NCBI GenBank assembly: GCA_002269645.1 | Contig: NIVC01001689.1 | Span: 62,001-126,000, forward strand | Direction: 5' to 3' | DNA from: Macrostomum lignano | Taxonomy: Eukaryota | DNA: 64,000 nt | In this document: piece by piece, positions 3,961 through 59,155 of the stretch | Layout of the letters: each line of letters opens with the position of its first letter | Position numbering within the stretch: the first letter of the stretch is position 1 | Made by a program: the position numbers and the translations under genes | The notes under the pieces: generated by a model | Databases searched by the model: none | What the model was told of the DNA's origin: nothing | Seen by the model: the letters and a program-made list of their open reading frames with translations, nothing else

Positions 3961-4438
3961 TAGGGCAACAACCCTAAAATTCATAATAGCTTTCCTATAG
4001 TTTCCAAGAACCTAATGGTAATTGTAGCATTTTCCTCTGGCTAAAACTGGACTATATATCATAGTCTATCCAATTGTTTGAAACTCACATTTATCTACAG
4101 AAAGGCTAATAATTGTACTAGCAAGCTTTGAATGGGGATGCTAATCAACTAAAGCAATAAATCTTTGCTTTTTGTATATTATATTTAAAGTAAAAGCAAG
4201 AAATTTCTCACATATAAATCTAAATATACTAAATCTCTAAGTTTTGTATGCTTGATTGCTTGTCCATAATTAATACTAATAATAGTAGCGCTATCGAATT
4301 GTTTTCACGACTCTACTTTTAGTAGTAATGCAGAGAAATTACTCAAAATAATCATTTTAACATTATTTGCTCTACTAAATGTGAAAATCTTGTTTTTTCT
4401 AATTATTCACTAAGCAATGCTGCTGCCCGTCACTTCAG

Positions 4439-5025
4439 CTGCAGTCCATCGCCATCTCGGACCCAACTGTCGCGCGCCTCGAGCGATGGCGCGTGAAGCC
4501 GGGTCAATATGTGAACCCCACCGACTCGCTCGGCCTGTTGCGCACCTCGGCCGGCAAGGAGCTGCGCCTGTACCCGCCCAACGGCGGCCGCATTGTCCGC
4601 CTTCTGGTGTCGGACGGTTCAGCGGTGAAGCTTGGCGACGCCGTCTGCGAGCTGGAGCCGTGCGAGCACTCCATCGTGATGAAGGACCTCTGCGCCGAGT
4701 GCGGCCAGAACCTGCGAACTGAAAATGGCGCGCCAGGCGAACGGCGCCAATCGGCCTTAGCAACCGTTGCTATGGTTCACTGCATCCCAGAGCTGCACGT
4801 CAGCCAGGGCCGGGCGGAATGTCTCGCTGCCGAGGACGAAGACCTGCTGCTCAAACAGAGGAAGCTGGTGCTGCTGGTCGACCTGGACCAGACGGTGATT
4901 CACACCACCACTCAGAATGTGCCGCCCAAGCTGGCTAAAGTGCACCACTTCCAGCTGAAGCCGCCGGTGTGGTACCACACTCGGGTGCGACCAGGTGTTG
5001 AAGAGTTTCTCGCTCGAATTTCTAG
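4439..5025 (+). CDS. CTDP1: FCP1 coding exon 1 (5' boundary uncertain)
   Basis: Frame open from 4403 (TAA at 4400-4402); donor AG|GTTCGT at 5026. Confidence 0.85.
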
Positions 5026-8000
5026 GTTCGTCTGAATGTTGCTTAACCCAAAGCTAAGCTGAAATATCCCAGACTAGTAAAGTCGCTGTGACAGAATCGC
5101 CCTGACAAATCGCCGAATCTAGAGTCGCCCAGTCCACAATTGCCTAATCCAGAATCGCCCTGACAGAATCGCCCAGTCCAGAATCGCCCAATCCAGAATC
5201 GCCCAGTCCAGAATCGCCCAATCCAGAATCGCCCAATCCAGAATCGCCCTAAACCCCCACAGCCTGTATGAGTTGCACATCATCAGCTTCGGCAACCGGC
5301 CCTACGCCCACAAGATCGCCAGCCTGATTGACCCGGAGAAGCGCTATTTCTCGCACCGAATTCTCAGCCGAGACGAATGCTACAATCCGCTAACAAAGAC
5401 CGCCAATTTAAAGTCTTTATTCCCGCGCGGCGATCATATGATTGTCATCATTGACGACCGGGACGAGGTCTGGGACTCGATGCCCAGTCTGATCCACGTC
5501 AAACCCTACCAGTTCTTCGAGGGCACTGAGGATATCAATTGCCCGCCGGGCTCCGCTGTCCCAGCCTCCAAAGCCGACCCAATGGACCTGGTTGAGAAGG
5601 CCATGGAGCACCAGCACCCGCAGCCGGAGAAACAGCAGGAGCAGCAGCCGCAGGATCCCAATCAGCCTATTGAGTGGCCGGACAATGACAGGTAAGTGAA
5701 ACTGTGTGGACCTATCTGCCTGCAGGCATTCAGTTCTGTGTCCGATCCGGAGTACCACTGCCTGGTAGGAATTCCCTGTCCAGAATACCGTCTGGTAGGA
5801 ATTCCCCTGTTTGGTAGGAATTCCACTGTCTGGTAGGAATTCCCCTGTCTGGTAGGAATTCCACTGTCTGGTAGGAATTCCCCTCTCTGGTAGGAATTCC
5901 ACTGTCTGGTAGGAATTCCCCTGTCTGGTAGGAATTCCACTGTCTGGTAGGAATCCCCCTGTCTAGTAAGAATTCCCCTGTCTGGTAGTAATTCCCGTCT
6001 ATCTAATTCCACTGTCTGGTAGGAATTCCACTGTCTGGTAGGAATTCCACTGTCTGGTAGGAATTCCCCTCTCTGGTAGGAATTCCACTGTCTGGTAGGA
6101 ATTCCCCTCTCTGATAGGAATTCCCCTCTATCGAATTCCACTGTCTGGTAGGAATTCCCCTGTTTGGAATACCTCTGACCGATCCATTTTATTGAGAATT
6201 CCCCCGTCCAATCGCCCTGCGTTCGCATTTCTTATTGGGTATTTCCGAATTCCCTCTGTTTACGAGAGGGAATTCTCGTATAATTATTTTTCCTGTTGTC
6301 TGATATCAATCGTGCGAGCCCCGCGCCGCGCCCACAGGTACCTGTACCGGCTGGCCGACATCCTGACGGACATCCACTCTGAATATTATCGCCGACTGGA
6401 CGCGTCCACTGGCGCCGACGGTGGCGGCGGCGGCGATTCAGCGACGGCGGCGACAGCGTCAACAAAGGCGAAGCCGCCAGAGTCGCGGCAGGTGTGCACC
6501 GAGCTGCGCGGCCAGGTGCTCCGCGGCTGCCGCCTGGTGTTCAGCGGCCTGTTCCCTACCAGCCTGCCGCCGGAGAAGAGCAAAGCCTACCAGATTGCCA
6601 CCGGCCTGGGCGCCGAGGTGCAGGCAGACGTGCAGCTGGGCAGCAAAGTGGCTCAGGTATTGTGCTGTCAGTTTGTGCTGCCAGTTTGTGCTGTCAGTTT
6701 GTGTTGTCAGTTTGTGTTGTCAGTTTGTGCTGCCAGTTTGTGCTGCCAGTTTGTGCTGTCAGTTTGTGCTGCCAGTTTGTGCTGTCAGTTTGTGCTGCCA
6801 GTTTGTGCTGTCAGTTTGTGCTGCCAGTTTGTGCTGTCAGTTTGTGTTGTCAGTTTGTGCTGCCAGTTTGTGCTGCCAGTTTGTGCTGCCAGTTTGTGCT
6901 GCCAGTTTGTGCTGCCAGTTTGTGCTGTCAGTTTGTGCTGTCAGTTTGTGCTGCCAGTTTGTGCTGTCAGTTTGTGCTGTCAGTTTGTGCTGTCAGTTTG
7001 TGCTGCCAGTTTGTGCTGTCAGTTTGTGCTGTCAGTTTGTGTTGTCAGTTTGTGCTGTCAGTTTGTGCTGCCAGTTTGTGCTGTCAGTTTGTGCTGCCAG
7101 TTTGTGCTATCAGCTGTACTATCAGCTGTGCCATCATTCAAAATGTCAGTCCTTCCTGTCAGTCAGTATTAGAAGTCAAGCGGGCCACCCGTCTCCCACC
7201 CGCAGGACAGCCGCACCACTCACCTGGTGGCTGCCAAGAGCGGTACATCGAAATTCCACCGGGCCCGCAAGGCCCAGTCGGAATCGCCTGACGGCTGCAG
7301 CATCGTGAACCCCGAGTGGCTGTGGACCTGCTACTACGAATGGCGCCGCTGCCCGGAGGCCGACTTCCCTGTCGTCGCCGACGTCGACTATCTGGGCTTG
7401 CGGCGCGACTCCCGGCAGCGCCGGGACAGCGAGGTCAAGCGGTACAAGTCGGACAGGAAGCGCCGCCGCCAGGAGTCCCTGGTGGTGACGCCGGAGGAGG
7501 CGACAGCAAAAGAGGACGGCGACGAAGAGACTGAGAATTCTGGAGCTGCGACGGCGGCGACGACAGCACTCTCGGTGTCCAAGGAGGCGCCTCCAGCGGC
7601 TCCGCCGGCGGCTTCAAGCAGCGGCGGCGGCAGTAGCCAGCAGCGACGTTTTGAACTGGCCGACAATCCGCTGCTCAGCATGTCCCCAAGCGACCTGAGG
7701 AGCCTGCAGGACGAGGTCGACGCCGAGCTGGAGGGAATTTCTTCCTCATCGTCTTCGTCCTCCTCCAGCTCGGAGTCGGAGGCCCGGCTGCGTCGCAAAG
7801 TTCTCCGGTTCAGCTCCGGCGAGGCCTCCGGTAAGTCGGTCGCTTCTGGCGGTAGCGGCGGCACTTCAAAGCGGAAGCTGGCCAAGAAGATGAAGGAGCT
7901 GAAGAGACGAGGTGGCGACGGCAAGCGGGCTGCGGCGGCTGCGGCAGATTCCACCGATGACGAAGAGGACGAAGAGGAGTCTGGCGGATCGATGGAGAAC

Positions 8001-8231
8001 GGCGCCGGAGCGGCGGCAGCGCCCGGCGAGGACCGCGACTGGGGCGAGGGCTGCAAGGAGGGCTACGATTACGCTGATGCCGAGGCCAATTTCCACGTGC
8101 TTGGCGGCGACGTCGACTCGAGCACGGACGAGGGCGAGGATCAGGATGATGAAGACGACGACGAAGATGATGAAGCTGACTCTATTGAGGCTGGGGAGCG
8201 GCGCCGGCGAAAACGGGAATGGCGCCGCTAG
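4439..8231 (+). CDS. CTDP1: RNA polymerase II CTD phosphatase FCP1; exons 4439(or 4415/4445)-5025, 5263-5691, 6338-6656, 7206-8231; about 787 aa; start codon unresolved
   Basis: N-terminal lipoyl-like region (LERWRVKPG...CEHSIVMKDLCAECG), catalytic DLDQT in LVLLVDLDQTVIHTT, LYELHIISFGNRPYA, HRILSRDEC, IVIIDDRDEVW, BRCT domain (VLRGCRLVFSGLFP...THLVAAKSGT...VNPEWLWTC) and acidic C-terminus. GT-AG introns with phases 2,2,0 join in frame. Confidence 0.93.
5085..5250. repeat. 15-bp minisatellite, FCP1 intron 1
   Basis: (ccagaatcgcccaat/agt)n. Confidence 0.9.
5263..5691 (+). CDS. CTDP1: FCP1 exon 2 (FCPH domain)
   Basis: Acceptor ccccacag|C, donor AG|GTAAGT. Confidence 0.92.
5760..6165. repeat. 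19-20-bp minisatellite, FCP1 intron 2
   Basis: (gtctggtaggaattccact)n with palindromic GGAATTCC. Confidence 0.95.
6338..6656 (+). CDS. CTDP1: FCP1 exon 3 (helical region, BRCT N-half)
   Basis: Acceptor gcccacag|G, YLYRLADILTDIHSEYY, donor CAG|GTATTG. Confidence 0.88.
6660..7110. repeat. 13-bp minisatellite, FCP1 intron 3
   Basis: (cagtttgtgctgy)n starting right after the donor. Confidence 0.95.
7206..8231 (+). CDS. CTDP1: FCP1 exon 4 (BRCT C-half, acidic/Ser-rich tail, stop)
   Basis: Acceptor cacccgcag|GAC, TAG at 8229-8231. Confidence 0.9.
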   Translation, partial: DSRTTHLVAAKSGTSKFHRARKAQSESPDGCSIVNPEWLWTCYYEWRRCPEADFPVVADVDYLGLRRDSRQRRDSEVKRYKSDRKRRRQESLVVTPEEATAKEDGDEETENSGAATAATTALSVSKEAPPAAPPAASSSGGGSSQQRRFELADNPLLSMSPSDLRSLQDEVDAELEGISSSSSSSSSSSESEARLRRKVLRFSSGEASGKSVASGGSGGTSKRKLAKKMKELKRRGGDGKRAAAAAADSTDDEEDEEESGGSMENGAGAAAAPGEDRDWGEGCKEGYDYADAEANFHVLGGDVDSSTDEGEDQDDEDDDEDDEADSIEAGERRRRKREWRR

Positions 8232-8344
8232 AGACTTTGAACCCAGGCACCTGTTGTGAATTGCCGTCGGCTAAGGAAGTCTAAATTTTACTATTTAAAA
8301 CTTTTCAATTCGGCCTATGTAATTTCGTAAAATCGCTATCCAAC

Positions 8345-8835
8345 CCAGTAGAATCACTCCTGCAACCAGGTAGAATCGCCTCCTGCAACCCGGTAGAATC
8401 GCCTCCTACAACCCGGTAGAATCGTCTCCTACAACCCGGTAGAATCGCCTCCTACAACACGGTAGAATCACCCCCTACAACCCGGTAGAATCGCCTCCTA
8501 CAACCCGGTAGAATCGCCTCCTACAACCCGGTAGAATCGCCTCCTACAACCCGGTAGAATCGCCTCCTACAACCCGGTAGAATCGACCCCTGCAACCCGG
8601 TAGAATCGACCCCTTTACAACACGGTAGAATCGCCTCCTACAATCCGGTAGAATCGCCCCCTGCAACCCGGTAGAATCGCCCCCTGCAACCCGGTAGAAT
8701 CGTCCCCTGCAACCCGGTAGAATCGACCCCTACAATCCGGTAGAATCGCCCCCTACAACCCGGTAGAATCGCCCCCTGCAACCCGGTAGAATCGACCCCT
8801 ACAACCCGGTAGAATCGCCCCCTACAACCCGGCAG
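8345..8835. repeat. 23-bp minisatellite 3' of FCP1
   Basis: (acaacccggtagaatcgcctcct)n. Confidence 0.95.
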
Positions 8836-9429
8836 AATTGCTCTAGAAATTTCACATCGTCCAGTGAGTTTCCAGCATCCCTGAGCCTCATCAGTTCACC
8901 CGATGGGCATTAGCATTGTTTTTGCTATTTTCTCGTTATCAATGAAGGACACGACGGCACTCTCTGCTTCACACAATTCATTTATATGCTTTTCCTTCGT
9001 AATTTGCCGCATTTTTGATCCCTTATTCTTTGCTTCTACTTTTAGTAGTAAAAAATAGGTTAAATTAGATTAGCAGCGTCATCTAACATTTGAATTTCTA
9101 CTGTGTTGTTCAGCATAGGCTAATGATGTTATTATGTAATCAATAATTTCTACTGGTACGTTTCAAGCGCATTAAGTGACTGAATTTATACTCGTAAGTT
9201 ACTTGTTGAAGCGTGTCGATAAAAAGTAATTAATTTAATATATAAATATATAACTTTATTATTTATTTATTTAGTACACCAGTTTATAGTACGAGATAAA
9301 AACTGATTAAACAGAAATTCTGCCCTGCCCTCCTAATTTTTATTCCTAACGTGCGGCCTTTGCGTCGAAATACAAGCTGGGTCTTGACACAGGAACACAG
9401 GCTGTGCTTAAATTGGTTTGGGCCCAAAT

Positions 9430-9755: not shown

Positions 9756-10004
9756 GGTTTTGAATACGTGCCAAACTGTGCAGTAGATAGGCAGTTAGCC
9801 AATTAAGTAAGTGTCGCTATATTTTTAGCATTCAACGAAAACTGGCGAGTAAATAAATGAATGATTACTCATTTTGCAGATTTTTTTCATGCAGTAAGTG
9901 CTTCTGTCAATCAAATTCATTTTATAGCAAACGCTTAATACATTTGTAGAAAGTTGGGTAAAATAATTGAGCACATTCTCATTGCCTGCGGGGTTGCGGC
10001 ACAA

Positions 10005-10595
10005 GTTTCAAACCGGACTCTCCCCAGCTGTCAAACCGGACTCTCCCAGCCCCAGCTGTCAAACCGGACTCTCCCAGCCCCAGCTGTCAAACCGGACTCT
10101 CCCCAGCTGTCAAACCGGACTCTCCCAGCCCCAGCTGTCAAACCGGACTCTCCCAGCCCCAGCTGTCAAACCGGACTCTCCCCAGCTGTCAAACCGGACT
10201 CTCCCAGCCCCAGCTGTCAAACCGGACTCTCCCAGCCCCAGCTGTCAAACCGGACTCTCCCCAGCTGTCAAACCGGACTCTCCCCAGCTGTCAAACCGGA
10301 CTCTCCCCAGCTGTCAAACCGGACTCTCCCAGCCCCAGCTGTCAAACCGGACTCTCCCAGCCCCAGCTGTCAAACCGGACTCTCCCAGCCCCAGCTGCCA
10401 AACCGGACTCTCCCCAGCTGTCAAACCGGACTCTCCCCAGCTGTCAAACCGGACTCTCCCCAGCTGTCAAACCGGACTATCCCAGCCCCAGCTGTCAAAC
10501 TGGACTATCCCAGCCCCAGCTGTCAAGCCGGACTCTCCCAGCCCCAGCTGTCAAACCGGACTATCCCAGCCCCAGCTGTCAAACTGGACTCTCCG
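10005..10595. repeat. 23/28-bp minisatellite immediately after the calmodulin-like stop
   Basis: (cagctgtcaaaccggactctccc[agccc])n. Confidence 0.95.
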
Positions 10596-10599
10596 CTGC

Positions 10600-11081
10600 C
10601 TAAGCGGACTCCAGGAAGTCGGCAGCCTTAGAAAACTCCTCAACCGCGATCTGCCCATCCTTGTCCGTGTCCAGCGCCTCAAACATTTCATCCAGCTCGC
10701 GCTTCCCAACGCTCGCCTCAACGAACATCAGCGCCTCCCGGGCCTCCGCCCGCGTGATCTGGCCGTTGCCGTTGCGGTCCAGCGAGTGGAAAATCTGCGA
10801 CATTTCAACGTCGCACGGCACCGGCTTGCTGGACTTCATCATCGCGCAGAAGTTCTCAAAGTTCACCCCGCCTATGTCGTTGGGATCGTGCGCCCGGATC
10901 ATGGCGCAGACCTCCTTGCGGGTGGCGAACATGTTCAGCTGTTTGAGCAGCCGGTTCAGGTCCGCGAAGTCAATGAGGCCGTCTTTGTTCAGGTCCACCA
11001 GCTTGAACATCTCCGCCAGGCGGGCCGTCTCCGGGTCATCGAAGTATCTCTGGGTGGCTCGGTGAGCCCGATCGGACAAGA
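10600..11081 (-). CDS. Calmodulin-like main exon (all EF hands)
   Basis: ORF 10600-11133; acceptor gatctcag|TC; TAG at 10602-10600. Confidence 0.9.
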
Positions 11082-11772
11082 CTGAGATCCTGGAGGGTGG
11101 CGGGCGGGAGATGCGGACACGCATGCGCAACACCCGATCGGGCCGGCTGGCAGGGGCCCAGCCAAGGTAAGTCGCAAAAATGTCCAGCCCACCCGAAAAA
11201 GACGTAGTTGTTTTAATTACAGTAGATGACGAAGCATTTAGCCTTAATAATACAGTTATAGTTACTCCTGCCGTTTATCCAAAACTAGCAAAATTTTAGA
11301 ATTGGTCAAAAAGTAAGTTGCACGGCCGGTGTAAATCATGGGGGGGTTGCGCATTTATGGATGCGGATCTGGGATGGGGTTGAGAGATTGATATTTGAGA
11401 ATTTGAGAATGGTGTACTTGGAGATTGGCGATCCATGGCCATGGGATGAGGCTTTGGAGATGTGATCTGGGATTTTATTGGAAATCTGCGATGAGGAACT
11501 GGGGATGGGGATCGGAATCTTCAGTAAGGTGAGGTGGATCTTCAGTCTCTCTCACCTTGTGGAATATTTCGGCTGCTGGCTGACCTGAGGCATCGAGGAG
11601 CCGGACAGCCTGGGCAGTTAAGAAAGGCATTGAGGTGCGCCGGTGAAAAATTGCTTTAGATTGCTAAGATTTGTATCCACAGTCAGAAAAGCAGCAGAGA
11701 GTTGGCTCACCTGGCGGATGGCAGCCGCTTAGACTGCCTGTTCATGGGAAACATTTTCACAGAGTTCCTCAT
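10600..11772 (-). CDS. Calmodulin-like four-EF-hand protein, about 190 aa; exons 11772-11711, 11584-11556, 11081-10600
   Basis: Four EF loops: DLNKDGLIDFAD, DPNDIGGVNFEN, DRNGNGQITRAE, DTDKDGQIAVEE. Two short upstream exons with donors AG|GTGAGC and AG|GTGAGA join in frame (phases 2,1), giving the N-terminus MRNSVKMFPMNRQSKRLPSARSASSRNIPQVLSDR. Confidence 0.82.
11120..11360 (+). repeat. Dispersed repeat, copy B, in calmodulin-like intron 2
   Basis: Co-linear with 1370-1660. Confidence 0.75.
11556..11584 (-). CDS. Calmodulin-like 29-nt microexon (predicted)
   Basis: gatgcctcag|G...CAAG|GTGAGA; phase 2 in and phase 1 out match the neighbouring exons. Confidence 0.65.
11711..11772 (-). CDS. 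Calmodulin-like first coding exon (predicted)
   Basis: ATG at 11772, donor AG|GTGAGC, acceptor-like ctgcag 22 nt upstream. Confidence 0.65.
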
Positions 11773-13185: not shown

Positions 13186-13491
13186 TCACCAGAAGATGCA
13201 CTTTTTCGCCGGATTCATCGGCTTGCCGCGGCGGCACTTGAAGGCCTCGGCGAATTCCGGGCTGTTCTCGGCGACGCCGCGGACGCGCAGGTGGTGCGGG
13301 CTGTGACTCGGCCAGCCCTGGTAGATTCGGTCCAGAATGTGAGACTCGGACTTGAAACACCACGACTGCGCAGCCTGGATGAACAGCTGCTGCTCCGGGC
13401 TGAGGCTGGCCGGCAGGTTGGGCAGCCGCGGCAACAGGCGGCCGCGGCCCTGGCGCCGGGACTTCAGCAGCTTCAGCGCTCCGACTGCGGC
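13186..13491 (-). CDS. M13 peptidase exon 3
   Basis: ttcattcag|GCC; TGA at 13188-13186. Confidence 0.9.
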   Translation of the reverse strand, partial: AAVGALKLLKSRRQGRGRLLPRLPNLPASLSPEQQLFIQAAQSWCFKSESHILDRIYQGWPSHSPHHLRVRGVAENSPEFAEAFKCRRGKPMNPAKKCIFW

Positions 13492-16400
13492 CTGAATGAA
13501 ATAGTGGCATCAGTGTGCACTTAGGCATCCTGAGGTGCGGCTGTGCTGACCTGTTTGCGCTGACAATTTAAAAGCCTAATCTAAATGCGAGGAATGGGAA
13601 CGCGAAAGTTAAGTTCCGCCCGAGCTCGCAGACTAGAAATTCAATTTAAATTCGCGCCAAAAATGACGACACCCATTTATAAAAACGATTGTTTAGATAT
13701 TCACGCAAATCGTGCCTGCGCACCCTCCCTCCCGTCCTACCCCTCCTCCTTCCCCCAGCAGTGTACATACGCATGTACAATGTGTAAATAAAAAATATCG
13801 ATCAATATTTAAGCCCCACCGCCTCTCTTTGCCGCCTACCCAGCCTTATCTGCCCCGCTGCCGCCAACCCCCCCCCCGCTAGCGAGGCCTGCCTCTCATT
13901 TAATTACTCCCAGAATTGGGGGTGTTCAAAATGTTTAACAACTCCCTCGTTTTACAATGCCCCAAATTTACATAGGATTTAGTTTAACGCGGAAGTTTAG
14001 CGTTCTAATTTAAGTTTTGGTTTTATTTTAGTTTAACGAGTTTAACGTAGTTCTAGTTTAACGAGGAACTCAGCTTCTTCCATTTTTTACTTTGCTTCCA
14101 GAGTTCATCACTAAACAACCGCGCCCGGCCGCAGGCCTACTGGTTTTCTCAAATTTAAATTTAGAATTAAATAACTATTCGCAATATTACATATTAGTTG
14201 TGTATCCACCTGAATCCCGATGATGTCGGCAATGTCGTTGCCCAGGGTGCTGTTTGACAGGTGCACCGGGCCGCCAGGATACAGCCTGTAGTCACCATAG
14301 CGACTCCTTACGCACTCCATCCTGTCCAGGTAGTTCGCTTCAGTCTCATTGTCCCAGAAGTGTCCGATTGCGCCCGGCTGGTCGATCTGGTGGCCGGTGT
14401 TGTCGAAGGAGTGGCCGATTTCGTGCCCAATGACGTAACCAATGCTGCCCAGGTTGATGTGGGGCGGGTAGCTGGGATGATAATATGGCGGCGCCAGGAT
14501 TGCCATCGGAAAAATTATCTGGTTGCGCTCGATCCAGTTGAAAGCGTTCACCACGAGCGGGCTGATCTCCATGAACAGCGTGACGGGGCTCAAGCTGGAC
14601 ATCACGTCGAAGTTCTTGTGGGCGTAGGCGCACAGGGCCAGGGAGAACAGGGTGCCAAATTTCCTGTCCAGATTAGAAGGACGCAAGTCCACGGCGCGGA
14701 ACTCCTCCAAGGTGGGCGCGTAGAAAGCCTTGAACTCGGCTGCCGAGATCTTGTCCAGCCCGATGGTCTCCTTTGCCGCCCGAATCTTCTTCTCGATGGC
14801 CACCTTGGCGCTGGGGGTGATCCACGACTGTCCCCTGACCCCGGCGATGGCGGCTTCCTTGATGAGCTTCACCAGTTCGTTGACATCGCTAAAGTCCTGC
14901 TGATGGTAGGCGGTCTGGTACATCCGCTCCAGAATCGGCTGCAGCAGCGTCTTCGTCCAGAGCATGCAGCTGGCCACGCCGTCGCCTTCGATGTCTCTGG
15001 CCACCTGCGTTCTGCCGCTCTTTAAATTCTGCAGGTCGGGTGGGAAGAAACTTCGGAAGCTCAGCAGCCAGTCGAACACCAGAAAGGCGGCGTCGTCAGA
15101 CAACAGACTGGCGCTGCTGTCGTTGCTTTTGGCGAAGACAGGGCGAGACTTGATGTCGTTGACAAAGTTGATGACTTCCTTGATGTTGGGCAGCTGCACC
15201 AGGGCGGATCTGTCCACTGGCGACTGCAGCAGCTCGTCGAAGAAGCGGCTCCAAGAGAACGGGACACCTCCCTTTGCCGCGGCCACGCAGGCGGAGAGCT
15301 CGTCGAGCTCAGACACGTTGTACTTGGCGCCGGAGTCGAGCCCGAAGCTGTACCTCTCGGGAACGGTGCAGCCACCAGGCCCGTACAGGCTGTTGTCGTT
15401 GAGCGACTTCTCGATTCGCTTGATGATCCTCTGGAAACGCGGCCGAGAGGCGTTGCCAACAAGGCTGCCGAAGTCCAGCAGCGGAGCTCCCAGCTTCCGC
15501 TCAGTCAGGAAGTCCAGCCATTCGCGGAAGAAGGCGTTCCTCTCCAGCTCGGCGCTGCCCCGCAGAAACAGACTCAATCTATCGATGCTGACCACCGCTC
15601 TGGCCGTCTGCGTCAGGTTGAAGTCGTCATTCTCAATGACGTTTGTGGCGAATTGCCTCGGCAAGGTCACCCCGAGCATGCCGCTGCCGCCGGTCTTCAC
15701 CAGGGTGGCCAATACAGTTTCCATGGCAACCTCCTCGTTGCACAGAGTCCACAGTGTTTCATTCAGGTGGTCCAGCACTCCGGCGAAGAAGCTGGCGCTG
15801 TTTGCCGCATTCAAGCTTGCGCTTGGCTGGCCGAATCCACCACCGCTGCGCGTGTGCACCCACTGCCTGCAGCTCCGGTAGAACAGGCGGGTGAAGTTGA
15901 ACAGGTCCGAGATGTCCTGGTCTGGACTGCTGGCCACCTGGAGTCGTGTTGGTCATGCATTTTTATAAGCTAGACTTGACTGAGTCAATATTGCATTGAC
16001 ATATTTATCCTATCAATCTATCCCATTGTTCATATGTTTGCCCAATATTTTCCCCAATTGCACAATATTTTATTCAGGGGCGTCACCACCCCGGGGGAAC
16101 AGGTGGACATACCAATGCTTTCCCCCTCCACCTTGTGACCCGTTATGGTAATCAATAATCTTGCTTGGGGCGCCAAAATGAGTGCCTGTCTGTGGCGCCA
16201 AAATGAGTGCCTGTCTGTGGCGCCGAAATGAGTGCCTGTCTGTGGCGCCAAAATGAGTGCCTGTCTGTGGCGCCGAAATGAGTGCCTGTCTGTGGCGCCA
16301 AAATGAGTGCCTGTCTGTGGCGCCGAAATGAGTGCCTGTCTGTGGCGCCAAAATGAGTGCCTGTCTGTGGCGCCGAAATGAGTGCCTGTCTGTGGCGCCA

Positions 16401-17428
16401 AAATGAGTGCCTGTCTGTGGCGCCGAAATGAGTGCCTGTCTGTGGCGCCAAAATGAGTGCCTGTCTGTGGCGCCGAAATGAGTGCCTGTCTGTGGCGCCA
16501 AAATGAGTGCCTGTCTGTGGCGCCGAAATGAGTGCCTGTCTGTGGCGCCAAAATGAGTGCCTGTCTGTGGCGCCGAAATGAGTGCCTGTCTGTGGCGCCA
16601 AAATGAGTGCCTGTCTGTGGCGCCAAAATGAGTGCCTGTCTGTGGCGCCAAAATGAGTGCTAACAATTATACAAATTCTTTAATAATGTAGCAATTTCGT
16701 CATGCCAGAATTCTTGGATTATCCTCCCGACCATACAATCCATTTATGACGCCCCTGATTTCCTTTCTCGTACGTTGTGATTGGCTTTGGTCGGAGTGAC
16801 TTTCGCCAATGGCGGATCCATGGGGGTCAAAGGGGGTCAGCTGACCCCTTCGGGAAAAATCCTTAGATCCGGCCCTGACGTTCTCTCACAATTATTTTCT
16901 CCCTGAGTTGCGTGGAGAAGTGATTCGAGGCGGAAAACTCATTGGAAGCCACAACATTTTTCAACACCGCCAACGGATAGCCATGTTGAAGTGCACAGCC
17001 ATTCCACCCGAGGAGCCCCAATCTCAGAAACCGCGCACCCGATCCAGCACTAGCAGCTCGTAGATGTTCCTCTCCAGCCCGTCGGACATCAGGCTCATCC
17101 GGTCCTCGAACAGCAGGTCGCCGTCTTTAAACGACATTCCAGCCGAGGCGCGCACCGGGTCGTACCTGACCATGCTGGGAAAATTGCCGCAAGCGTAATT
17201 GTAGAAATCCTCGCAGGGATCGGCCGAGGTGTTCATGTAGCTGGCCATCTGGGCGGCCAGCGACACGCACTCGACACTCTGGCAGGTGACGGGAATGGCG
17301 GACTGGCCCGGGCCGGGTTCGCTGGCATTGCGGCGGATTTCAAACCGGATTGAATTGGCTAGCGGGGAGAGGAGGGCGACCGTCACGACAGTCAGGAGAC
17401 TTCTGGCTTGCAAAGCCGCAACAGACAT
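13186..17428 (-). CDS. M13 family (neprilysin/ECE-like) metallopeptidase homolog, about 807 aa, likely secreted; exons 17428-17039, 15937-14210, 13491-13186
   Basis: Hydrophobic N-terminus, DPCEDFYNYACG, VNAFN, GYVIGHEIGHSFD (HExxH), TLGNDIAD, C-terminal SPEQQLF..AQSWC..HSP..RV..AFKC..MNPAKKC.FW; both introns phase 0 GT-AG. Confidence 0.9.
14210..15937 (-). CDS. M13 peptidase exon 2
   Basis: ctccag|GTG; 576 codons; donor CAG|GTGGAT. Confidence 0.9.
16170..16660. repeat. 25-bp minisatellite with 50-bp dimer structure, M13 intron 1
   Basis: (cgccRaaatgagtgcctgtctgtgg)20, with A and G alternating. Confidence 0.95.
17039..17428 (-). CDS. M13 peptidase exon 1 (signal peptide, Cys cluster)
   Basis: ATG at 17428; donor CGG|GTGCGC. 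Confidence 0.85.
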
Positions 17429-17529
17429 GATTGTCGATCAGTCAGATGTCGATTTTTGCCTAATAAAGATGAAAATGGCAGGTCTTTGAAGTTGGTTTGC
17501 CAAATTTTGTCCGCGCAAGTTTGGTCCAA

Positions 17530-19340: not shown

Positions 19341-22300
19341 TTTGAAAGGAAACTGCCATTTTATTTGACAGAGGGCCATTTGATTTGAGGCAGTGCCATT
19401 GGATTTGAGGCAGTGCCATTGGATTTGAGGGAGTGCCATTGAATTTGAGGCAGTGCCATTGGATTTGAGGCAGTGCCATTTGATTTGAGGGAGTGCCATT
19501 TTATTCGAGGCGGTGCCATTTGATTTGAGGCAGTGCCATTTGGTTTAAGGCAGTGTCATTGGATTTGAGGCAGTGCCATTGGATTTGAGGCAGTGCCATT
19601 GGATTTGAGGCAGTGCCATTGGATTTAAGGCAGTGCCATTGGATTTGAGGCAGTGCCATTGGATTTGAGGCAGTGCCATTGGATTTGAGGCGGTGCCATT
19701 TGATTTGAGGCAGTGCCATTTGATTTGAAAGGAAACTGCCATTTTATTTGACAGAGGGCCATTTGATTTGAGGCAGTGCCATTTGATTTGAGGCAGTGCC
19801 ATTTGATTTGAGGCAGTGCCATTTGATTTGAGGCAGGATTTGAGGTAGTGCCATTGGATTTGAGGGAGTGCAATTATATTTGATGGAGTGCCATTTGATT
19901 TGAGGCAGTGCCATTTGATTTGAGGCAGTGCCATTGGATTTGAGGGAGTGCCATTGAATTTGAGGCAGTGCCATTTGATTTGAGGCAGTGCCATTGGATT
20001 TGAGGGAGTGCCATTGAATTTGAGGCAGTGCCATTGGATTTGAGGCAGTGCCATTGGATTTGAGGGAGTGCCATTATATTTGAAGGAGTGCAATTTTATT
20101 TCACAGAGGGCCATTTGATTTGAGGCAGTGCCATTTGATTTGAGGCAGTGCCATTTGATTTGAGGCAGTGCCATTTGATTTGAGGCAGTGCCATTTGATT
20201 TGAGGGAGTGCCATTATATTTGACGGAATGCCATTTTATTCGACAGAGGGCCATTTGATTTGAGGCAGTGCCATTTGATTTAAGGCAGTGCCATTGAATT
20301 TGAGGGAGTGCCATTGAATTTGAGGCAGTGCCATTGGATTTGAGGCAGTGCCATTTGATTTGAGGGAGTGCCATTTTATTCGACAGAGGGCCATTTGATT
20401 TGAGGCAGTTCCATTAGATTTGAGGGAGTGCCATTAGATTTGAGGCAGTGCCATTGGATTTGAGGCAGTGCCATTTGATTTGAGGGAGTGCCATTTTATT
20501 CGAGGCGGTGCCATTTGATTTGAGGCAGTGCCATTTGGTTTAAGGCAGTGTCATTGGATTTGAGGCAGTGCCATTGGATTTGAGGGAGTGCCATTGGATT
20601 TGAGGCAGTGCCATTGGATTTGAGGCGGTGCCATTTGATTTGAGGCAGTGCCATTTGATTTGAAAGGAAACTGCCATTTTATTTGACAGAGGGCCATTTG
20701 ATTTGAGGCAGTGCCATTGGATTTGAGGCGGTGCCATTTGATTTGAGGCAGTGCCATTTGATTTGAAAGGAAACTGCCATTTTATTTGACAGAGGGCCAT
20801 TTGATTTGAGGCAGTGCCATTGGATTTGAGGGAGTGCCATTGAATTTGAGGCAGTGCCATTGGATTTGAGGGAGTGCCATTGAATTTGAGGGAGTGCCAT
20901 TGAATTTGAGGCAGTGCCATTGGATTTGAGGGAGTGCCATTGGATTTGAGGGAGTGCCATTATATTTGACGGAGTGCCATTTTATTTCACAGAGGGCCAT
21001 TTGATTTGAGGCAGTGCCATTTGATTTGAGGCAGTGCCATTTGATTTGAGGGAGTGCCATTATATTTGACGGAATGCCATTTTATTCGACAGAGGGCCAT
21101 TTGATTTGAGGCAGTGCCATTTGATTTAAGGCAGTGCCATTGGATTTGAGGGAGTGCCATTGAATTTGAGGCAGTGCCATTGGATTTGAGGCAGTGCCAT
21201 TGGATTTGAGGGAGTGCCATTGGATTTGAGGCAGTGCCATTGGATTTGAGGGAGTGCCATTGGATTTGAGGGAGTGCCATTGGATTTGAGGCAGTGCCAT
21301 TTGATTTGAGGGAGTGCCATTATATTTGACGGAGTGCCATTTTATTTCACAGAGGGCCATTTGATTTGAGGCAGTGCCATTTGATTTGAGGCAGTGCCAT
21401 TGGATTTGAGGGAGTGCCATTAGATTTGAGGGAGTGCCATTGGATTTGAGGGAGTGCCATTAGATTTGAGGGAGTGCCATTGAATTTGAGGCAGTGCCAT
21501 TGGATTTGAAGGAGTGCCATTGAATTTGAGGGAGTGCCATTGAATTTGAGGCAGTGCCATTGGATTTGAGGGAGTGCCATTGGATTTGAGGGAGTGCCAT
21601 TGGATTTGAGGCAGTGCCATTTGATTTGACGGAGTGCCATTTTATTTGACAGAGGGCCATTTGATTTGAGGCAGTGCCATTTGATTTGAGGCAGTGCCAT
21701 TGGATTTGAGGGAGTGCCATTAGATTTGAGGCAGTGCCATTGGATTTGAGGGAGTGCCATTGGATTAGAGGGAGTGCCATTGGATTTGAGGGAGTGCCAT
21801 TGGATTTGAGGGAGTGCCATTGGATTTGAGGGAGTGCCATTGGATTAGAGGGAGTGCCATTGGATTTGAGGGAGTGCCATTAGATTTGAGGCAGTGCCAT
21901 TGGATTTGAGGGAGTGCCATTGGATTTGAGGGAGTGCCATTGGATTTGAGGGAGTGCCATTGGATTTGAGGGAGTGCCATTGGATTTGAGGGAGTGCCAT
22001 TGGATTTGAGGGAGTGCCATTGGATTTGAGGGAGTGCCATTGGATTTGAGGGAGTGCCATTAGATTTGAGGCAGTGCCATTGGATTTGAGGCAGTGCCAT
22101 TGGATTTGAGGGAGTGCCATTGGATTTGAGGGAGTGCCATTGGATTTGAGGGAGTGCCATTGGATTTGAGGGAGTGCCATTGGATTTGAGGGAGTGCCAT
22201 TGGATTTGAGGGAGTGCCATTGGATTTGAGGCAGTGCCATTGGATTTGAGGGAGTGCCATTGGATTTGAGGCAGTGCCATTGGATTTGAGGGAGTGCCAT

Positions 22301-25300
22301 TAGATTTGAGGCAGTGCCATTGGATTTGAGGGAGTGCCATTGGATTTGAGGGAGTGCCATTGGATTTGAGGGAGTGCCATTGGATTTGAGGGAGTGTCAT
22401 TGGATTTGAGGCAGTGCCATTTGATTTGAGGGAGTGCCATTATATTTGACGGAGTGCCATTTTATTTCACAGAGGGCCATTAGATTTGAGGCAGTGCCAT
22501 TTGATTTGAGGCAGTGCCATTGGATTTGAGGGAGTGCCATTAGATTTGAGGGAGTGCCATTGAATTTGAGGCAGTGCCATTGGATTTGAAGGAGTGCCAT
22601 TGAATTTGAGGGAGTGCCATTGAATTTGAGGCAGTGCCATTGGATTTGAGGGAGTGCCATTGGATTTGAGGGAGTGCCATTGGATTTGAGGCAGTGCCAT
22701 TTGATTTGACGGAGTGCCATTTTATTTGACAGAGGGCCATTTGATTTGAGGCAGTGCCATTTGATTTGAGGCAGTGCCATTGGATTTGAGGGAGTGCCAT
22801 TGGATTTGAGGTAGTGCCATTGGATTTGAGGGAGTGCAATTATATTTGATGGAGTGCCATTTGATTTGAGGCAGTGCCATTTGATTTGAGGCAGTGCCAT
22901 TGGATTTGAGGCAGTGCCATTGGATTTGAGGGAGTGCCATTATATTTGAAGGAGTGCCATTTTATTTCACAGAGGGCCATTTGATTTGAGGCAGTGCCAT
23001 TTGATTTGAGGCAGTGCCATTTGATTTGAGGGAGTGCCATTATATTTGACGGAATGCCATTTTATTCGACAGAGGGCCATTTGATTTGAGGCAGTGCCAT
23101 TTGATTTAAGGCAGTGCCATTGGATTTGAGGGAGTGCCATTGAATTTGAGGCAGTGCCATTGGATTTGAGGCAGTGCCATTTGATTTGAGGGAGTGCCAT
23201 TTTATTCGAGGCGGTGCCATTTGATTTGAGGCAGTGCCATTTGGTTTAAGGCAGTGTCATTGGATTTGAGGCAGTGCCATTGGATTTGAGGGAGTGCCAT
23301 TGGATTTGAGGCAGTGCCATTGGATTTGAGGCGGTGCCATTTGATTTGAGGCAGTGCCATTTGATTTGAAAGGAAACTGCCATTTTATTTGACAGAGGGC
23401 CATTTGATTTGAGGCAGTGCCATTGGATTTGAGGCGGTGCCATTTGATTTGAGGCAGTGCCATTTGATTTGAAAGGAAACTGCCATTTTATTTGACAGAG
23501 GGCCATTTGATTTGAGGCAGTGCCATTGGATTTGAGGGAGTGCCATTGAATTTGAGGCAGTGCCATTGGATTTGAGGGAGTGCCATTGAATTTGAGGGAG
23601 TGCCATTGAATTTGAGGCAGTGCCATTGGATTTGAGGGAGTGCCATTGGATTTGAGGGAGTGCCATTATATTTGACGGAGTGCCATTTTATTTCACAGAG
23701 GGCCATTTGATTTGAGGGAGTGCCATTTGATTTGAGGCAGTGCCATTTGATTTGAGGGAGTGCCATTATATTTGACGGAATGCCATTTTATTCGACAGAT
23801 GGCCATTTGATTTGAGGCAGTGCCATTTGATTTAAGGCAGTGCCATTGGATTTGAGGGAGTGCCATTGAATTTGAGGCAGTGCCATTGGATTTGAGGCAG
23901 TGCCATTGGATTTGAGGGAGTGCCATTGGATTTGAGGCAGTGCCATTGGATTTGAGGGAGTGCCATTGGATTTGAGGGAGTGCCATTGGATTTGAGGCAG
24001 TGCCATTTGATTTGAGGGAGTGCCATTATATTTGACGGAGTGCCATTTTATTTCACAGAGGGCCATTTGATTTGAGGCAGTGCCATTTGATTTGAGGCAG
24101 TGCCATTGGATTTGAGGGAGTGCCATTAGATTTGAGGGAGTGCCATTGGATTTGAGGGAGTGCCATTAGATTTGAGGGAGTGCCATTGAATTTGAGGCAG
24201 TGCCATTGGATTTGAAGGAGTGCCATTGAATTTGAGGGAGTGCCATTGAATTTGAGGCAGTGCCATTGGATTTGAGGGAGTGCCATTGGATTTGAGGGAG
24301 TGCCATTGGATTTGAGGCAGTGCCATTTGATTTGACGGAGTGCCATTTTATTTGACAGAGGGCCATTTGATTTGAGGCAGTGCCATTTGATTTGAGGCAG
24401 TGCCATTGGATTTGAGGGAGTGCCATTAGATTTGAGGCAGTGCCATTGGATTTGAGGGAGTGCCATTGGATTAGAGGGAGTGCCATTGGATTTGAGGGAG
24501 TGCCATTAGATTTGAGGCAGTGCCATTGGATTTGAGGGAGTGCCATTGGATTTGAGGGAGTGCCATTGGATTTGAGGGAGTGCCATTGGATTTGAGGGAG
24601 TGCCATTGGATTTGAGGGAGTGCCATTGGATTTGAGGGAGTGCCATTGGATTTGAGGGAGTGCCATTGGATTTGAGGGAGTGCCATTAGATTTGAGGCAG
24701 TGCCATTGGATTTGAGGCAGTGCCATTGGATTTGAGGGAGTGCCATTGGATTTGAGGGAGTGCCATTGGATTTGAGGGAGTGCCATTGGATTTGAGGGAG
24801 TGCCATTGGATTTGAGGGAGTGCCATTGGATTTGAGGGAGTGCCATTGGATTTGAGGCAGTGCCATTGGATTTGAGGGAGTGCCATTGGATTTGAGGCAG
24901 TGCCATTGGATTTGAGGGAGTGCCATTAGATTTGAGGCAGTGCCATTAAATTTGAGGGAGTGCCATTGGATTTGAGGGAGTGCCATTGGATTTGAGGGAG
25001 TGCCATTGGATTTGAGGGAGTGTCATTGGATTTGAGGCAGTGCCATTTGATTTGAGGGAGTGCCATTATATTTGACGGAGTGCCATTTTATTTCACAGAG
25101 GGCCATTAGATTTGAGGCAGTGCCATTTGATTTGAGGCAGTGCCATTGGATTTGAGGGAGTGCCATTAGATTTGAGGGAGTGCCATTGAATTTGAGGCAG
25201 TGCCATTGGATTTGAAGGAGTGCCATTGAATTTGAGGGAGTGCCATTGAATTTGAGGCAGTGCCATTGGATTTGAGGGAGTGCCATTGGATTTGAGGGAG

Positions 25301-26852
25301 TGCCATTGGATTTGAGACAGTGCCATTTGATTTGACGGAGTGCCATTTTATTTGACAGAGGGCCATTTGATTTGAGGCAGTGCCATTTGATTTGAGGCAG
25401 TGCCATTGGATTTGAGGGAGTGCCATTGGATTTGAGGTAGTGCCATTGGATTTGAGGGAGTGCAATTATATTTGATGGAGTGCCATTTGATTTGAGGCAG
25501 TGCCATTTGATTTGAGGCAGTGCCATTGGATTTGAGGCAGTGCCATTGGATTTGAGGGAGTGCCATTATATTTGAAGGAGTGCCATTTTATTTCACAGAG
25601 GGCCATTTGATTTGAGGCAGTGCCATTTGATTTGAGGCAGTGCCATTTGATTTGAGGGAGTGCCATTATATTTGACGGAATGCCATTTTATTCGACAGAG
25701 GGCCATTTGATTTGAGGCAGTGCCATTTGATTTAAGGCAGTGCCATTGGATTTGAGGGAGTGCCATTGAATTTGAGGCAGTGCCATTGGATTTGAGGCAG
25801 TGCCATTTGATTTGAGGGAGTGCCATTTTATTTGACAGAGGGCCATTTGATTTGAGGCAGTTCCATTAGATTTGAGGGAGTGCCATTGGATTTGAGGCAG
25901 TGCCATTTGATTTGAGGCAGTGCCATTTGATTTGAGGGAGTGCCATTTTATTCGACAGAGGGCCATTTGATTTGAGGCAGTGCCATTAGATTTGAGGCAG
26001 TGCCATTGGATTTGAGGCAGTGCCATTGGGTTTGAGGGAGTGCCATTGGATTTGAGGGAGTGCCATTGGATTTGAGGGAGTGCCATTGGATTTGAGGGAG
26101 TGCCATTAGATTTGAGGCAGTGCCATTGGATTTGAGGGAGTGCCATTGGATTTGAGGGAGTGCCATTGGATTTGAGGGAGTGCCATTAGATTTGAGGCAG
26201 TGCCATTGGATTTGAGGGAGTGCCATTGGATTTGAGGCAGTGCCATTGGATTTGAGGGAGTGCCATTGGATTTGAGGGAGTGCCATTGGATTTGAGGGAG
26301 TGCCATTAGATTTGAGGGAGTGCCATTAGATTTGAGGCAGTGCCATTGGATTTGAGGCAGTGCCATTGGATTTGAGGGAGTGCCATTGGATTTGAGGGAG
26401 TGCCATTGGATTTGAGGGAGTGCCATTGGATTTGAGGGAGTGCCATTGGATTTGAGGGAGTGCCATTGGATTTGAGGCAGGGCCATTGGATTTGAGGGAG
26501 TGCCATTGGATTTGAGGCAGTGCTATTGGATTTGAGGGAGTGCCATTAGATTTGAGGCAGTGCCATTGGATTTGAGGGAGTGCCATTGGATTTGAGGGAG
26601 TGCCATTGGATTTGAGGGAGTGCCATTAGATTTGAGGCAGTGCCATTGGATTTGAGGCAGTGCCATTTGATTTGAGGCAGTGCCATTGGATTTGAGGGAG
26701 TGCCATTGGATTTGAGGGAGTGCCATTGGATTTGAGGCAGTGCCATTGGATTTGAGGGAGTGCCATTGGATTTGAGGGAGTGCCATTAGATTTGAGGCAG
26801 TGCCATTGGATTTGAGGCAGTGCCATTGGATTTGAGGCAGTGCCATTGGATT
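19341..26852. repeat. 7.5-kb 20-bp satellite with 2.6-2.7-kb higher-order period
   Basis: (tgccattggatttgagg[g/c]ag)n; diagnostic variants recur at offsets 2706 and 2626. Confidence 0.98.
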
Positions 26853-27603
26853 TTTTTGATGTCGAGTACAATAGAAAACTCTAAGAAGGTGAAAGAGAAT
26901 TCTACTTTTTATCAAAATAAGCTAGCGAAGCTCGCCGAGCGCAAAAAGTTGGAAAAAAAGATCACACGTCAAGCGGTTTTGCATTCGTCATTTGTATTTC
27001 AATGGAACCGAAGATTATAAAAATGATTGCCCAGCGCACACACAAAAAGCCTTTAAGCGCAATGACCGAAACCGAGAGCATCATAGACGGGGTGGGGGTA
27101 CCAACAGCAATTATTTTGGTCGTATTGAAGTCGATGGGCAAAAATGCATCATTATTAGTAATAATAAATAATAAATAAGCCAGGGACACATGCTGGGGAG
27201 ACGCCGCGTCAAAAAATTCAAGCTAAAGCAAACAATTTTCATTTCCCATTGACTCAATTTGGCCAGGTCCGGAATAACAGGTGAGACTCGAATTTCAAAA
27301 ATGCTAATTCCGAATCGCTAAACACTTGATACCATAGTTACTGGAATAATAAGATCTGTCACTCGCAAAAATGCGTTTTAGCTTTAAGATAGAAATTTAA
27401 AAACATTTGCTTATCAAGATGTTTGAAGCTTTTAAAGTTGGAACAATCGCTTCTTCTGGCTTTCTAAAAGCAGACCCATTAAATTAGCATCTTCACTCTG
27501 TTTGAAGCTGCACCCAAATCCAGTGCGTGTGCATTAGTGAGCAAGAGAGAAAAGGGTGGTGCCGCAGGCCCCAGCCAGATAAACAGTTGGCTTTCCGCTT
27601 GCC

Positions 27604-28420: not shown

Positions 28421-51211
<22,791 letters not shown>

Positions 51212-51299
51212 GCATAGCAGACAGGAGCAGCTGTGGGTGGGCTGGGGCAGCTCGGAACTTCATGAAGTCCTGTTACTAATCTGCGAGCGTATTTATCTG

Positions 51300-59110: not shown

Positions 59111-59155
<45 letters not shown>

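What the first reader, a model, noticed from the sequence alone, without database searches (positions are those of the whole stretch)
4400..4681. FCP1 has no in-frame ATG; a spliced-leader AUG could supply the initiator
Seen in sequence: the frame encoding the conserved FCP1 N-terminus (LERWRVKPG...CEHSIVMKDLCAECG) is closed upstream by TAA at 4400-4402. Its first ATG is at 4679, inside the conserved domain, and the ATGs at 4417 and 4486 are out of frame. After a T-rich tract (tcttgttttttctaat), three AG sites (ending 4414, 4438, 4444) all leave the next base at a codon start. Established knowledge: flatworm spliced leaders end in AUG, which can act as the initiator Met. Inference: SL trans-splicing would yield M-LQSIAISDP... 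in frame. Caveat: two of the three AGs are in-frame CAG codons, so their phase agreement is partly automatic.
Basis: partly seen in the sequence, partly recalled or inferred. Interest (0 to 1): 0.72.

Follow-up and report, generated by a model that had tools for sequence, protein, structure and literature searches.

The report
Spliced leader supplies FCP1 start codon
In the flatworm Macrostomum lignano the gene for the RNA polymerase II phosphatase FCP1 has no usable start codon of its own, and its mRNA almost certainly gets one from the AUG at the end of the trans-spliced leader; this mechanism has been known in flatworms since 2006, so this is a clean but ordinary example.

Summary
TAA at 4400-4402 closes the FCP1 frame. 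ATGs 4417 and 4486 are out of frame, and the first in-frame ATG (4679) lies about 80 codons inside a conserved N-terminal domain. The AGs ending at 4414, 4438 and 4444 all leave the next base in phase 0.

The window is Macrostomum lignano, assembly Mlig_3_7, contig NIVC01001689.1. The GenBank protein PAA65043.1 ("BOX15_Mlig004593g1, partial") is 100% identical to my four-exon model. It starts, without Met, at LQSIAISDP, which is window 4439, the base after cttCAG. The paralogue's 5'-partial CDS starts 2 nt after the same CAG. Together the two pin the annotated mRNA 5' end to 4439.

That annotation set 5' ends from reads carrying the spliced leader. The M. lignano leader (35 nt) ends in ...TTGCATG, and CTTCAG fits the published trans-acceptor motif [T/C]TNCAG. 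Joining the leader at 4439 gives a 787-aa ORF, M-LQSIAISDP..., whose N-terminus aligns with the initiator Met of FCP1 in other animals.

The mechanism is established (Cheng et al. 2006; noted for Macrostomum in 2023), so this is a new member of a known kind. Interest is low to moderate.

The parts
4400..4402 (+). TAA that closes the FCP1 reading frame upstream; the in-frame ATGs at 4328 and 4379 lie before it.
4389..4414 (+). T-rich tract (tcttgttttttctaattattcactAAG) with a branch-point-like CTAAT (A at 4402) and the first AG, in AAG context. It may be a minor or alternative acceptor: older UniProt models (A0A1I8GR40, A0A1I8GSQ0) start, without Met, at 4415 (QCCCPSLQ...).
4417..4419 (+). Out-of-frame ATG (phase +2, 101-codon ORF with no family match). 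It reads ACG in the 99%-identical paralogue, so it is not conserved. It lies in the outron if 4438 is the acceptor.
4415..4438 (+). C/T-rich tract ending in CTTCAG, the inferred spliced-leader acceptor. It matches the M. lignano trans-acceptor motif [T/C]TNCAG, and its C-rich composition resembles this gene's three cis-acceptors.
4439..4444 (+). CTGCAG, a second motif match 6 nt downstream. It is a possible tandem acceptor and is also in phase (M-SIAISDP...).
4439..5025 (+). FCP1 exon 1 as annotated in GenBank (5'-partial CDS starting at 4439). It encodes the lipoyl-like N-terminal domain and the start of the FCPH/NIF phosphatase domain (DLDQT). The donor is AG|GTTCGT.
4679..4681 (+). First genomic in-frame ATG (Met of VMKDLCAECG), 80 codons into the conserved protein. 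In the trans-spliced mRNA it is preceded by two out-of-frame AUGs.
5263..5691 (+). FCP1 exon 2 (rest of the FCPH domain).
6338..6656 (+). FCP1 exon 3 (linker and start of BRCT).
7206..8231 (+). FCP1 exon 4 (BRCT, acidic C-terminus, TAG stop at 8229-8231).

Best explanation
The FCP1 (CTDP1) pre-mRNA of Macrostomum lignano is trans-spliced. The AT-rich outron, with its short upstream ORFs and the out-of-frame ATG 4417, is removed. The 35-nt spliced leader (...CAATTTATTGCAUG) is joined to the acceptor CTTCAG|CTG at 4438|4439. The leader's 3'-terminal AUG then becomes the first AUG of the mRNA (nt 33-35). It is in frame with CTG 4439 and initiates a 787-aa FCP1, M-LQSIAISDPTVARLERWRV... The gene encodes no initiator codon of its own for this protein.

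Shown here: the sequence facts, the species, the annotated 5'-partial CDS start at 4439, the frame arithmetic and the homology of the N-terminus. Inferred: that 4439 is a leader junction, from the way the annotation was built and from the motif. Also inferred: that ribosomes start at the leader AUG, by analogy with Schistosoma mansoni.
For: (1) Species. The window is identical to NIVC01001689.1 of M. lignano Mlig_3_7.

(2) Leader. The M. lignano leader is CGGTCTCTTACTGCGAAGACTCAATTTATTGCATG, and the trans-acceptor motif is [T/C]TNCAG (PMC8629364).

(3) Annotated start. PAA65043.1 ('partial', 786 aa) is 100% identical to my model and begins at LQSIAISDP; its CDS range is window 4439-8231. A 5'-partial ORF that starts here, and not at 4403 where the frame opens, means the transcript model begins at 4437-4439. 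The paralogue PAA93749.1 starts in phase +2 at the equivalent of 4441, which means 4439-4441. If both copies share one start, it is exactly 4439, the base after CAG.

(4) Source of the annotation. The pipeline (TBONE) set 5' ends of trans-spliced mRNAs from leader-containing reads after trimming the leader (PMC5730564).

(5) Frame. Leader plus 4439 gives one ORF of 787 aa from the leader AUG. If that AUG is skipped, the next AUGs are out of frame, one of them in a GCGAUGG context, before AUG 4679.

(6) Coding signal. 4439-4678 has coding periodicity (GC3 0.86). It aligns with the N-terminal domain of FCP1 from molluscs, annelids, echinoderms and arthropods, whose Met lies 0-8 residues before the position of L4439.

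(7) Independent copies. Four assembled copies (window, L002, and two models from the older ML2 assembly) share the same ATG-less frame-0 N-terminus. The two substitutions in exon 1 between window and paralogue are synonymous in frame 0.

(8) Precedent. The flatworm leader AUG is an established initiator (Cheng et al. 2006, as summarised in PMC9851317 and PMC12582326). The Macrostomum leader ATG is called a translation start codon in PMC10468722.
Against: I saw no leader-containing read, cDNA or browser track for this gene, and the gene ID was not found in any held supplement. The older UniProt models start at 4415, not 4439, so the exact acceptor or acceptors may differ or be multiple. The leader AUG has a weak context (U at -3, C at +4). 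Reads multi-map between the 99%-identical copies, so the two annotations are not independent evidence.
Confidence: 0.85

Rival explanations
1. Same mechanism, but the principal acceptor is the first AG (ctaAG|CAA at 4414|4415) or the third (CTGCAG|TCC at 4444|4445). The products would be M-QCCCPSLQLQSIAIS... (795 aa) or M-SIAISDP... (785 aa).
For: All three AGs are in phase. UniProt A0A1I8GR40 and A0A1I8GSQ0 start at QCCCPSLQ, which is 4415. The strongest T-rich tract precedes 4414, and G+C rises at 4415. CTGCAG also matches the motif. N-terminal lengths of homologues allow all three.
Against: The annotation based on leader reads, and its paralogue, fix 4439. 4414 is an AAG, does not match [T/C]TNCAG, and lies only 12 nt from the best branch-point-like CTAAT. 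With 4414 as acceptor, an out-of-frame AUG would sit 2 nt after the leader AUG. The older models are error-prone: they carry internal deletions and truncations.
Confidence: 0.07
2. Translation starts at the first genomic in-frame AUG (4679). The product is an N-terminally truncated FCP1 of 706 aa, and the upstream open frame is untranslated.
For: It is the only genomic in-frame ATG, and the catalytic FCPH and BRCT domains lie downstream of it.
Against: 4439-4678 has strong coding periodicity and is homologous to the N-terminal domain of FCP1 across animals. The Met is an internal conserved residue of VMKDLCAECG. Two out-of-frame AUGs precede it in the mRNA.
Confidence: 0.03
3. A cis-spliced upstream coding exon with its own ATG joins at one of the AGs.
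For: Each AG could equally serve as a cis-acceptor. Parasitic flatworms share acceptors between cis- and trans-splicing (PMC12582326).
Against: The transcript-based CDS is 5'-partial and begins at 4439. No gene is annotated in the 10 kb upstream. The upstream 4.4 kb is 25-40% G+C with no coding-like block in phase. Orthologue N-termini end where exon 1 begins, so no further residues are expected.
Confidence: 0.02
4. Non-AUG initiation (for example CUG 4439 or GUG 4493) on a trans-spliced or unspliced mRNA.
For: In-frame near-cognate codons exist.
Against: It is unnecessary once the leader AUG is present. On unspliced RNA the upstream AUGs (4328, 4379, 4417) would intercept scanning ribosomes.
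Confidence: 0.02
5. An assembly indel hides the fact that ATG 4417 is the true start.
For: The assembly is PacBio-based, and the paralogous copy does carry a 1-nt indel elsewhere in exon 1.
Against: The window, the paralogue and two models from a different assembly all read QCCCPSLQLQSIAISDP in frame 0. ATG 4417 is ACG in the paralogue. The frame +2 peptide has no family match.
Confidence: 0.01

Closest known systems
[quoted passage not shown] 2023, PMC9851317)
   Same: A flatworm leader ending in AUG is joined in frame to an ORF that lacks its own initiator. The leader AUG is the first AUG of the mRNA, and the conserved N-terminus begins at the junction.
   Different: The species is a free-living macrostomorph rather than a trematode, and the leader sequence differs (35 nt). 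Here the junction is inferred from annotation and not seen in cDNA, and translation has not been tested.
SL trans-splicing in Macrostomum lignano (Wudarski et al. 2017, PMC5730564; Ustyantsev & Berezikov 2021, PMC8629364) and congeners (PMC10468722)
   Same: Same organism, same leader, same acceptor motif. FCP1 is a conserved gene, the class reported to be enriched among trans-spliced genes. The 2023 paper already calls the terminal ATG a translation start codon.
   Different: In the papers I could search, none describes genes that depend on the leader AUG, and none mentions FCP1. GenBank simply labels the protein 'partial'.
FCP1/CTDP1, RNA polymerase II CTD phosphatase of other animals
   Same: Lipoyl-like N-terminal domain, FCPH/NIF domain with DxDxT (DLDQT), BRCT domain and acidic C-terminus. 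It is about 50% identical to mollusc and annelid orthologues over the conserved core.
   Different: The orthologues shown carry a Met at the head of their gene models, whereas the M. lignano gene has none.

Membership tests
Flatworm mRNAs initiated at the spliced-leader AUG (Cheng et al. 2006 type) | The organism's spliced leader ends in AUG | tested here: met
   The window is identical to an M. lignano contig. The published leader is ...TTGCATG (PMC8629364).
Flatworm mRNAs initiated at the spliced-leader AUG (Cheng et al. 2006 type) | The annotated mRNA 5' end coincides with a consensus trans-splice acceptor | tested here: met
   The 5'-partial CDS of PAA65043.1 starts at 4439, after CTTCAG ([T/C]TNCAG). 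The paralogue fixes the same end. The annotation used leader reads to set 5' ends.
Flatworm mRNAs initiated at the spliced-leader AUG (Cheng et al. 2006 type) | cDNA or reads with the leader physically joined at that site | not testable with these tools
   No M. lignano RNA-seq or transcript collection is reachable. The gene ID is absent from held supplements.
Flatworm mRNAs initiated at the spliced-leader AUG (Cheng et al. 2006 type) | The leader AUG is in frame with the conserved ORF, with no stop between | tested here: met
   Leader plus 4439 gives a 787-aa ORF (795 aa from 4415, 785 aa from 4445).
Flatworm mRNAs initiated at the spliced-leader AUG (Cheng et al. 2006 type) | No genomic in-frame AUG between the upstream stop and the conserved N-terminus | tested here: met
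   TAA is at 4400 and the next in-frame ATG is at 4679. Homology starts at about 4448.
Flatworm mRNAs initiated at the spliced-leader AUG (Cheng et al. 2006 type) | Translation actually initiates at the leader AUG | not testable with these tools
   This needs ribosome profiling, N-terminal proteomics or reporters.
FCP1/CTDP1 phosphatase | FCPH (NIF) domain with DxDxT catalytic motif | tested here: met
   Pfam NIF, E = 9.6e-23. LLVDLDQTVIHTT aligns with the orthologues.
FCP1/CTDP1 phosphatase | BRCT domain C-terminal to FCPH | tested here: met
   Pfam BRCT, 25.5 bits against a cut-off of 21.3.
FCP1/CTDP1 phosphatase | N-terminal lipoyl-like domain ending in C-x-H-x3-MKDLCAECG | tested here: met
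   Alignment with 17 orthologues. The Biotin_lipoyl_2 hit is weak and below the cut-off.

The most novel reading that the evidence does not exclude
FCP1, the phosphatase that recycles RNA polymerase II, can be made in M. lignano only from trans-spliced mRNA. Its synthesis would then be obligatorily gated by spliced-leader supply. Choice among three in-phase acceptors would give three different N-termini. This would create a regulatory feedback between co-transcriptional RNA processing and the CTD phosphorylation cycle.
Probability: 0.08. Interest if true: 0.6.

Novelty: new member of a known kind. Interest (0 to 1): 0.25.

Why it matters
The main value is for annotation. The GenBank entries PAA65043.1 and PAA93749.1 and the UniProt entries A0A1I8GR40 and A0A1I8GSQ0 are labelled partial or lack a Met, yet the protein is complete once the leader AUG is added. 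The same is probably true of many other 'partial' M. lignano CDSs that begin at a trans-splice site.

It also matters for experiments in this transgenic model. Reporters or knock-ins for such genes must keep the acceptor and its phase, or supply an ATG. It adds a free-living, early-branching flatworm example to a mechanism that was documented mainly in parasitic flatworms.

Tried and rejected
- Rfam scan of the window at gathering thresholds: no hits, so no SL RNA gene is present.
- Search for the leader's 3' half in the window: only a chance 3-mismatch hit.
- Two protein searches with short queries (195 and 242 aa) returned only short proteins at 62% identity or less and did not reveal the species. 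Only the full-length 794-aa model retrieved the M. lignano entries.
- Exact look-up of 10 mechanical ORFs: none is in the collection. The references included the stop codon, which may have spoiled the match.
- Searches for the gene ID Mlig004593 in full texts and in supplements of three M. lignano papers: nothing found.
- Cheng et al. 2006 is not held, so it is cited through later papers.
- Upstream G+C-richer patches at about 1300-1400, 1700-1800 and 2160-2296 were read as possible upstream exons. I rejected them: they have stops in frame, look like repeats, and nothing is annotated there.
- The 'ORF' at 9967-11082 is a 28-bp minisatellite.

Full report
**Observation.**
- TAA at 4400-4402 closes the frame.
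- The only in-frame ATGs nearby are 4328 and 4379, both before that stop, and 4679.
- ATG 4417 and ATG 4486 are in phase +2.
- The only AGs between 4380 and 4480 end at 4414, 4438 and 4444, and each leaves the next base in phase 0.
- G+C rises from about 26% to 59-69% at about 4400-4415.

The region 4439-4678 has the codon-position G+C of a coding exon in frame 0 (0.69/0.47/0.86, like the later exons). tblastn with homologues reaches back to 4448. The reading frame is therefore really open, coding and ATG-less for 80 codons.

**What the gene is.** I built a four-exon model: 4415 or 4439 to 5025, 5263-5691, 6338-6656, and 7206-8231. The donors are AG|GTTCGT, AG|GTAAGT and AG|GTATTG, and all acceptors are C-rich ...CAG. 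The product has a NIF/FCPH domain (E = 9.6e-23, DLDQT motif), a BRCT domain and a weak lipoyl-like N-terminal match. Its best named relatives are all 'RNA polymerase II subunit A C-terminal domain phosphatase'. It is FCP1/CTDP1.

**Which organism.** Two searches with short queries gave only short, unnamed or distant proteins. The full-length model hit PAA65043.1, 'hypothetical protein BOX15_Mlig004593g1, partial [Macrostomum lignano]', at 100% identity. The encoding contig NIVC01001689.1 (assembly GCA_002269645.1, Mlig_3_7) is identical to the window over the overlap, with window coordinate = L001 coordinate minus 1562.

**Where the public annotation starts the gene.** PAA65043.1 has 786 residues, no Met, and begins LQSIAISDP. 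Its CDS range is window 4439-8231.

The ranges in this collection are CDS-only. The neighbouring M13 peptidase range ends exactly at its stop codon.

A 5'-partial ORF that begins at 4439, rather than at 4403 where the frame opens, implies a transcript model starting at 4437-4439.

The 99%-identical second copy (PAA93749.1, NIVC01000022.1, locus L002) carries a 1-nt deletion further into exon 1. It was therefore translated in phase +2. Its partial CDS begins AVHRHLGP, 2 nt after the same CAG, which implies a start at 4439-4441. If both copies have the same 5' end, that end is exactly 4439, the first base after cttCAG.

The annotation was built by mapping reads that carried the leader, after trimming it, and cutting transcripts at those peaks (the TBONE pipeline, PMC5730564). 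That explains a clean 5' end at an AG and a 'partial' CDS.

**The leader and the acceptor.** M. lignano has one 35-nt leader, CGGTCTCTTACTGCGAAGACTCAATTTATTGCATG. The motif enriched at trans-acceptors is [T/C]TNCAG (PMC8629364).
- CTTCAG (4433-4438) and CTGCAG (4439-4444) both fit the motif. ACTAAG (4409-4414) does not.
- The 20 nt before the CAG at 4438 are C/T-rich, like the three cis-acceptors of this gene.
- The best branch-point-like CTAAT (A at 4402) is 12 nt from AG 4414 and 36 nt from AG 4438. That would favour 4438, but this is inference.

**Consequences of joining the leader.** With the junction at 4439, the leader AUG (mRNA nt 33-35) is the first AUG and opens a 787-aa ORF, M-LQSIAISDPTVARLERWRV... 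If it were skipped, ribosomes would meet two out-of-frame AUGs, one of them in a GCGAUGG context, before the in-frame AUG 4679. On unspliced RNA, the ATGs at 4328, 4379 and 4417 would come first.

In an alignment with 17 FCP1 proteins from molluscs, annelids, brachiopods, echinoderms, hemichordates, arthropods and cnidarians, the M. lignano sequence begins where theirs do. Their Met lies 0-8 residues before the column of L4439, and the whole 80-residue domain up to C-x-H-x3-MKDLCAECG is aligned. No upstream coding exon is therefore expected, and starting at 4679 would delete a conserved domain.

**Rivals.**
- *Assembly frameshift making ATG 4417 the true start.* This is excluded in practice. 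The window, the paralogue and two UniProt models from the older ML2 assembly all read QCCCPSLQLQSIAISDP in frame 0. ATG 4417 is ACG in the paralogue. The two base substitutions in exon 1 are synonymous in frame 0, and one is non-synonymous in phase +2. The phase +2 peptide matches no family.
- *Upstream cis exon.* None is annotated within 10 kb, and the upstream sequence is AT-rich and repeat-like.
- *Non-AUG initiation.* It cannot be excluded but is unnecessary.
- *Which acceptor.* This is the one real open point. The older UniProt models start at 4415, so 4414 may be a minor or alternative acceptor, and the tandem CAG at 4444 is also possible. All three are in phase, so the mechanism does not depend on the choice.

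**Comparison with what is known.** All reported flatworm leaders end in AUG. Cheng et al. (2006) showed in Schistosoma mansoni that this AUG is in frame in 28% of trans-spliced cDNAs and that more than 40 cDNAs need it as initiator. I take this from the summaries in PMC9851317 and PMC12582326 (see also PMC5832876).

I found no paper that lists leader-AUG-dependent genes in M. lignano or mentions FCP1. This is therefore a new, well-supported instance of a known mechanism, already implicit in the public annotation.

**Verdict.**
- Confidence is about 0.85 for trans-splicing at 4438|4439 with initiation at the leader AUG.
- Not shown here: a read with the leader joined at the site, and the protein's N-terminus.
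- Interest is low to moderate (0.25). The value is mainly in correcting 'partial' annotations and in construct design.
- The speculative reading, that FCP1 synthesis is gated by trans-splicing as a feedback on the Pol II cycle, is not excluded but has no support.

No step had to be referred.

Noticed in passing
L002:6250-6260 (equivalent to window 4691-4692): The second FCP1 copy (NIVC01000022.1) has a 1-nt deletion (TGCGCCGAG to TGCG-CGAG). GenBank PAA93749.1 is therefore a frame chimera whose first ~85 residues (AVHRHLGP...) come from the wrong frame. I did not resolve whether this is a real pseudogenising change or a PacBio indel.
   Followed up: partly
window 17246-17430 (- strand): The annotated CDS of the M13 peptidase gene (window 13186-17248) starts at an ATG placed directly after gccCAG. 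An in-frame ATG with a signal-anchor-like peptide (MSVAALQARSLLTVVTVALLS) lies 180 nt upstream at 17428. This suggests an internal leader acceptor and an alternative N-terminus without the anchor. The leader AUG would be in frame there too.
   Followed up: partly
window 4415 (UniProt A0A1I8GR40, A0A1I8GSQ0): Gene models from the older ML2 assembly begin, without Met, at QCCCPSLQ, directly after the first AG (4414). They also contain internal deletions and truncations. They hint at an alternative acceptor or at a gene-predictor artefact.
   Followed up: partly
window 19354-26853: A 7.5-kb array of about 375 copies of a 20-mer (TGCCATTGGATTTGAGGGAG) with strong GC skew. The mechanical 'ORFs' on the minus strand there are repeat artefacts.
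   Followed up: no
window 5108-5249, 5790-6167, 6660-7113, 8341-8838, 10022-10594 and about 30 more: Almost every intron and intergenic stretch holds its own 13-45-bp minisatellite, typical of the repeat-rich M. lignano genome. The long 'ORF' at 9967-11082 is one of these arrays.
   Followed up: partly
window 42389-43015 (+): A single-exon 208-aa ORF with a C-type lectin domain (Pfam E = 6.4e-05) lies on the strand opposite to CAD, between CAD exons. It appears to be a gene nested in a CAD intron.
   Followed up: no
window 51209-51240 (- strand): CAD has its own ATG (51211), 19 nt after a cccaCAG. If that CAG is a leader acceptor, the leader AUG would be out of frame with CAD. This contrasts with FCP1.
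   Followed up: no
window 56000-63000: Long CT-rich low-complexity tracts (periods 2, 7, 21-23) with strongly negative GC and AT skew.
   Followed up: no
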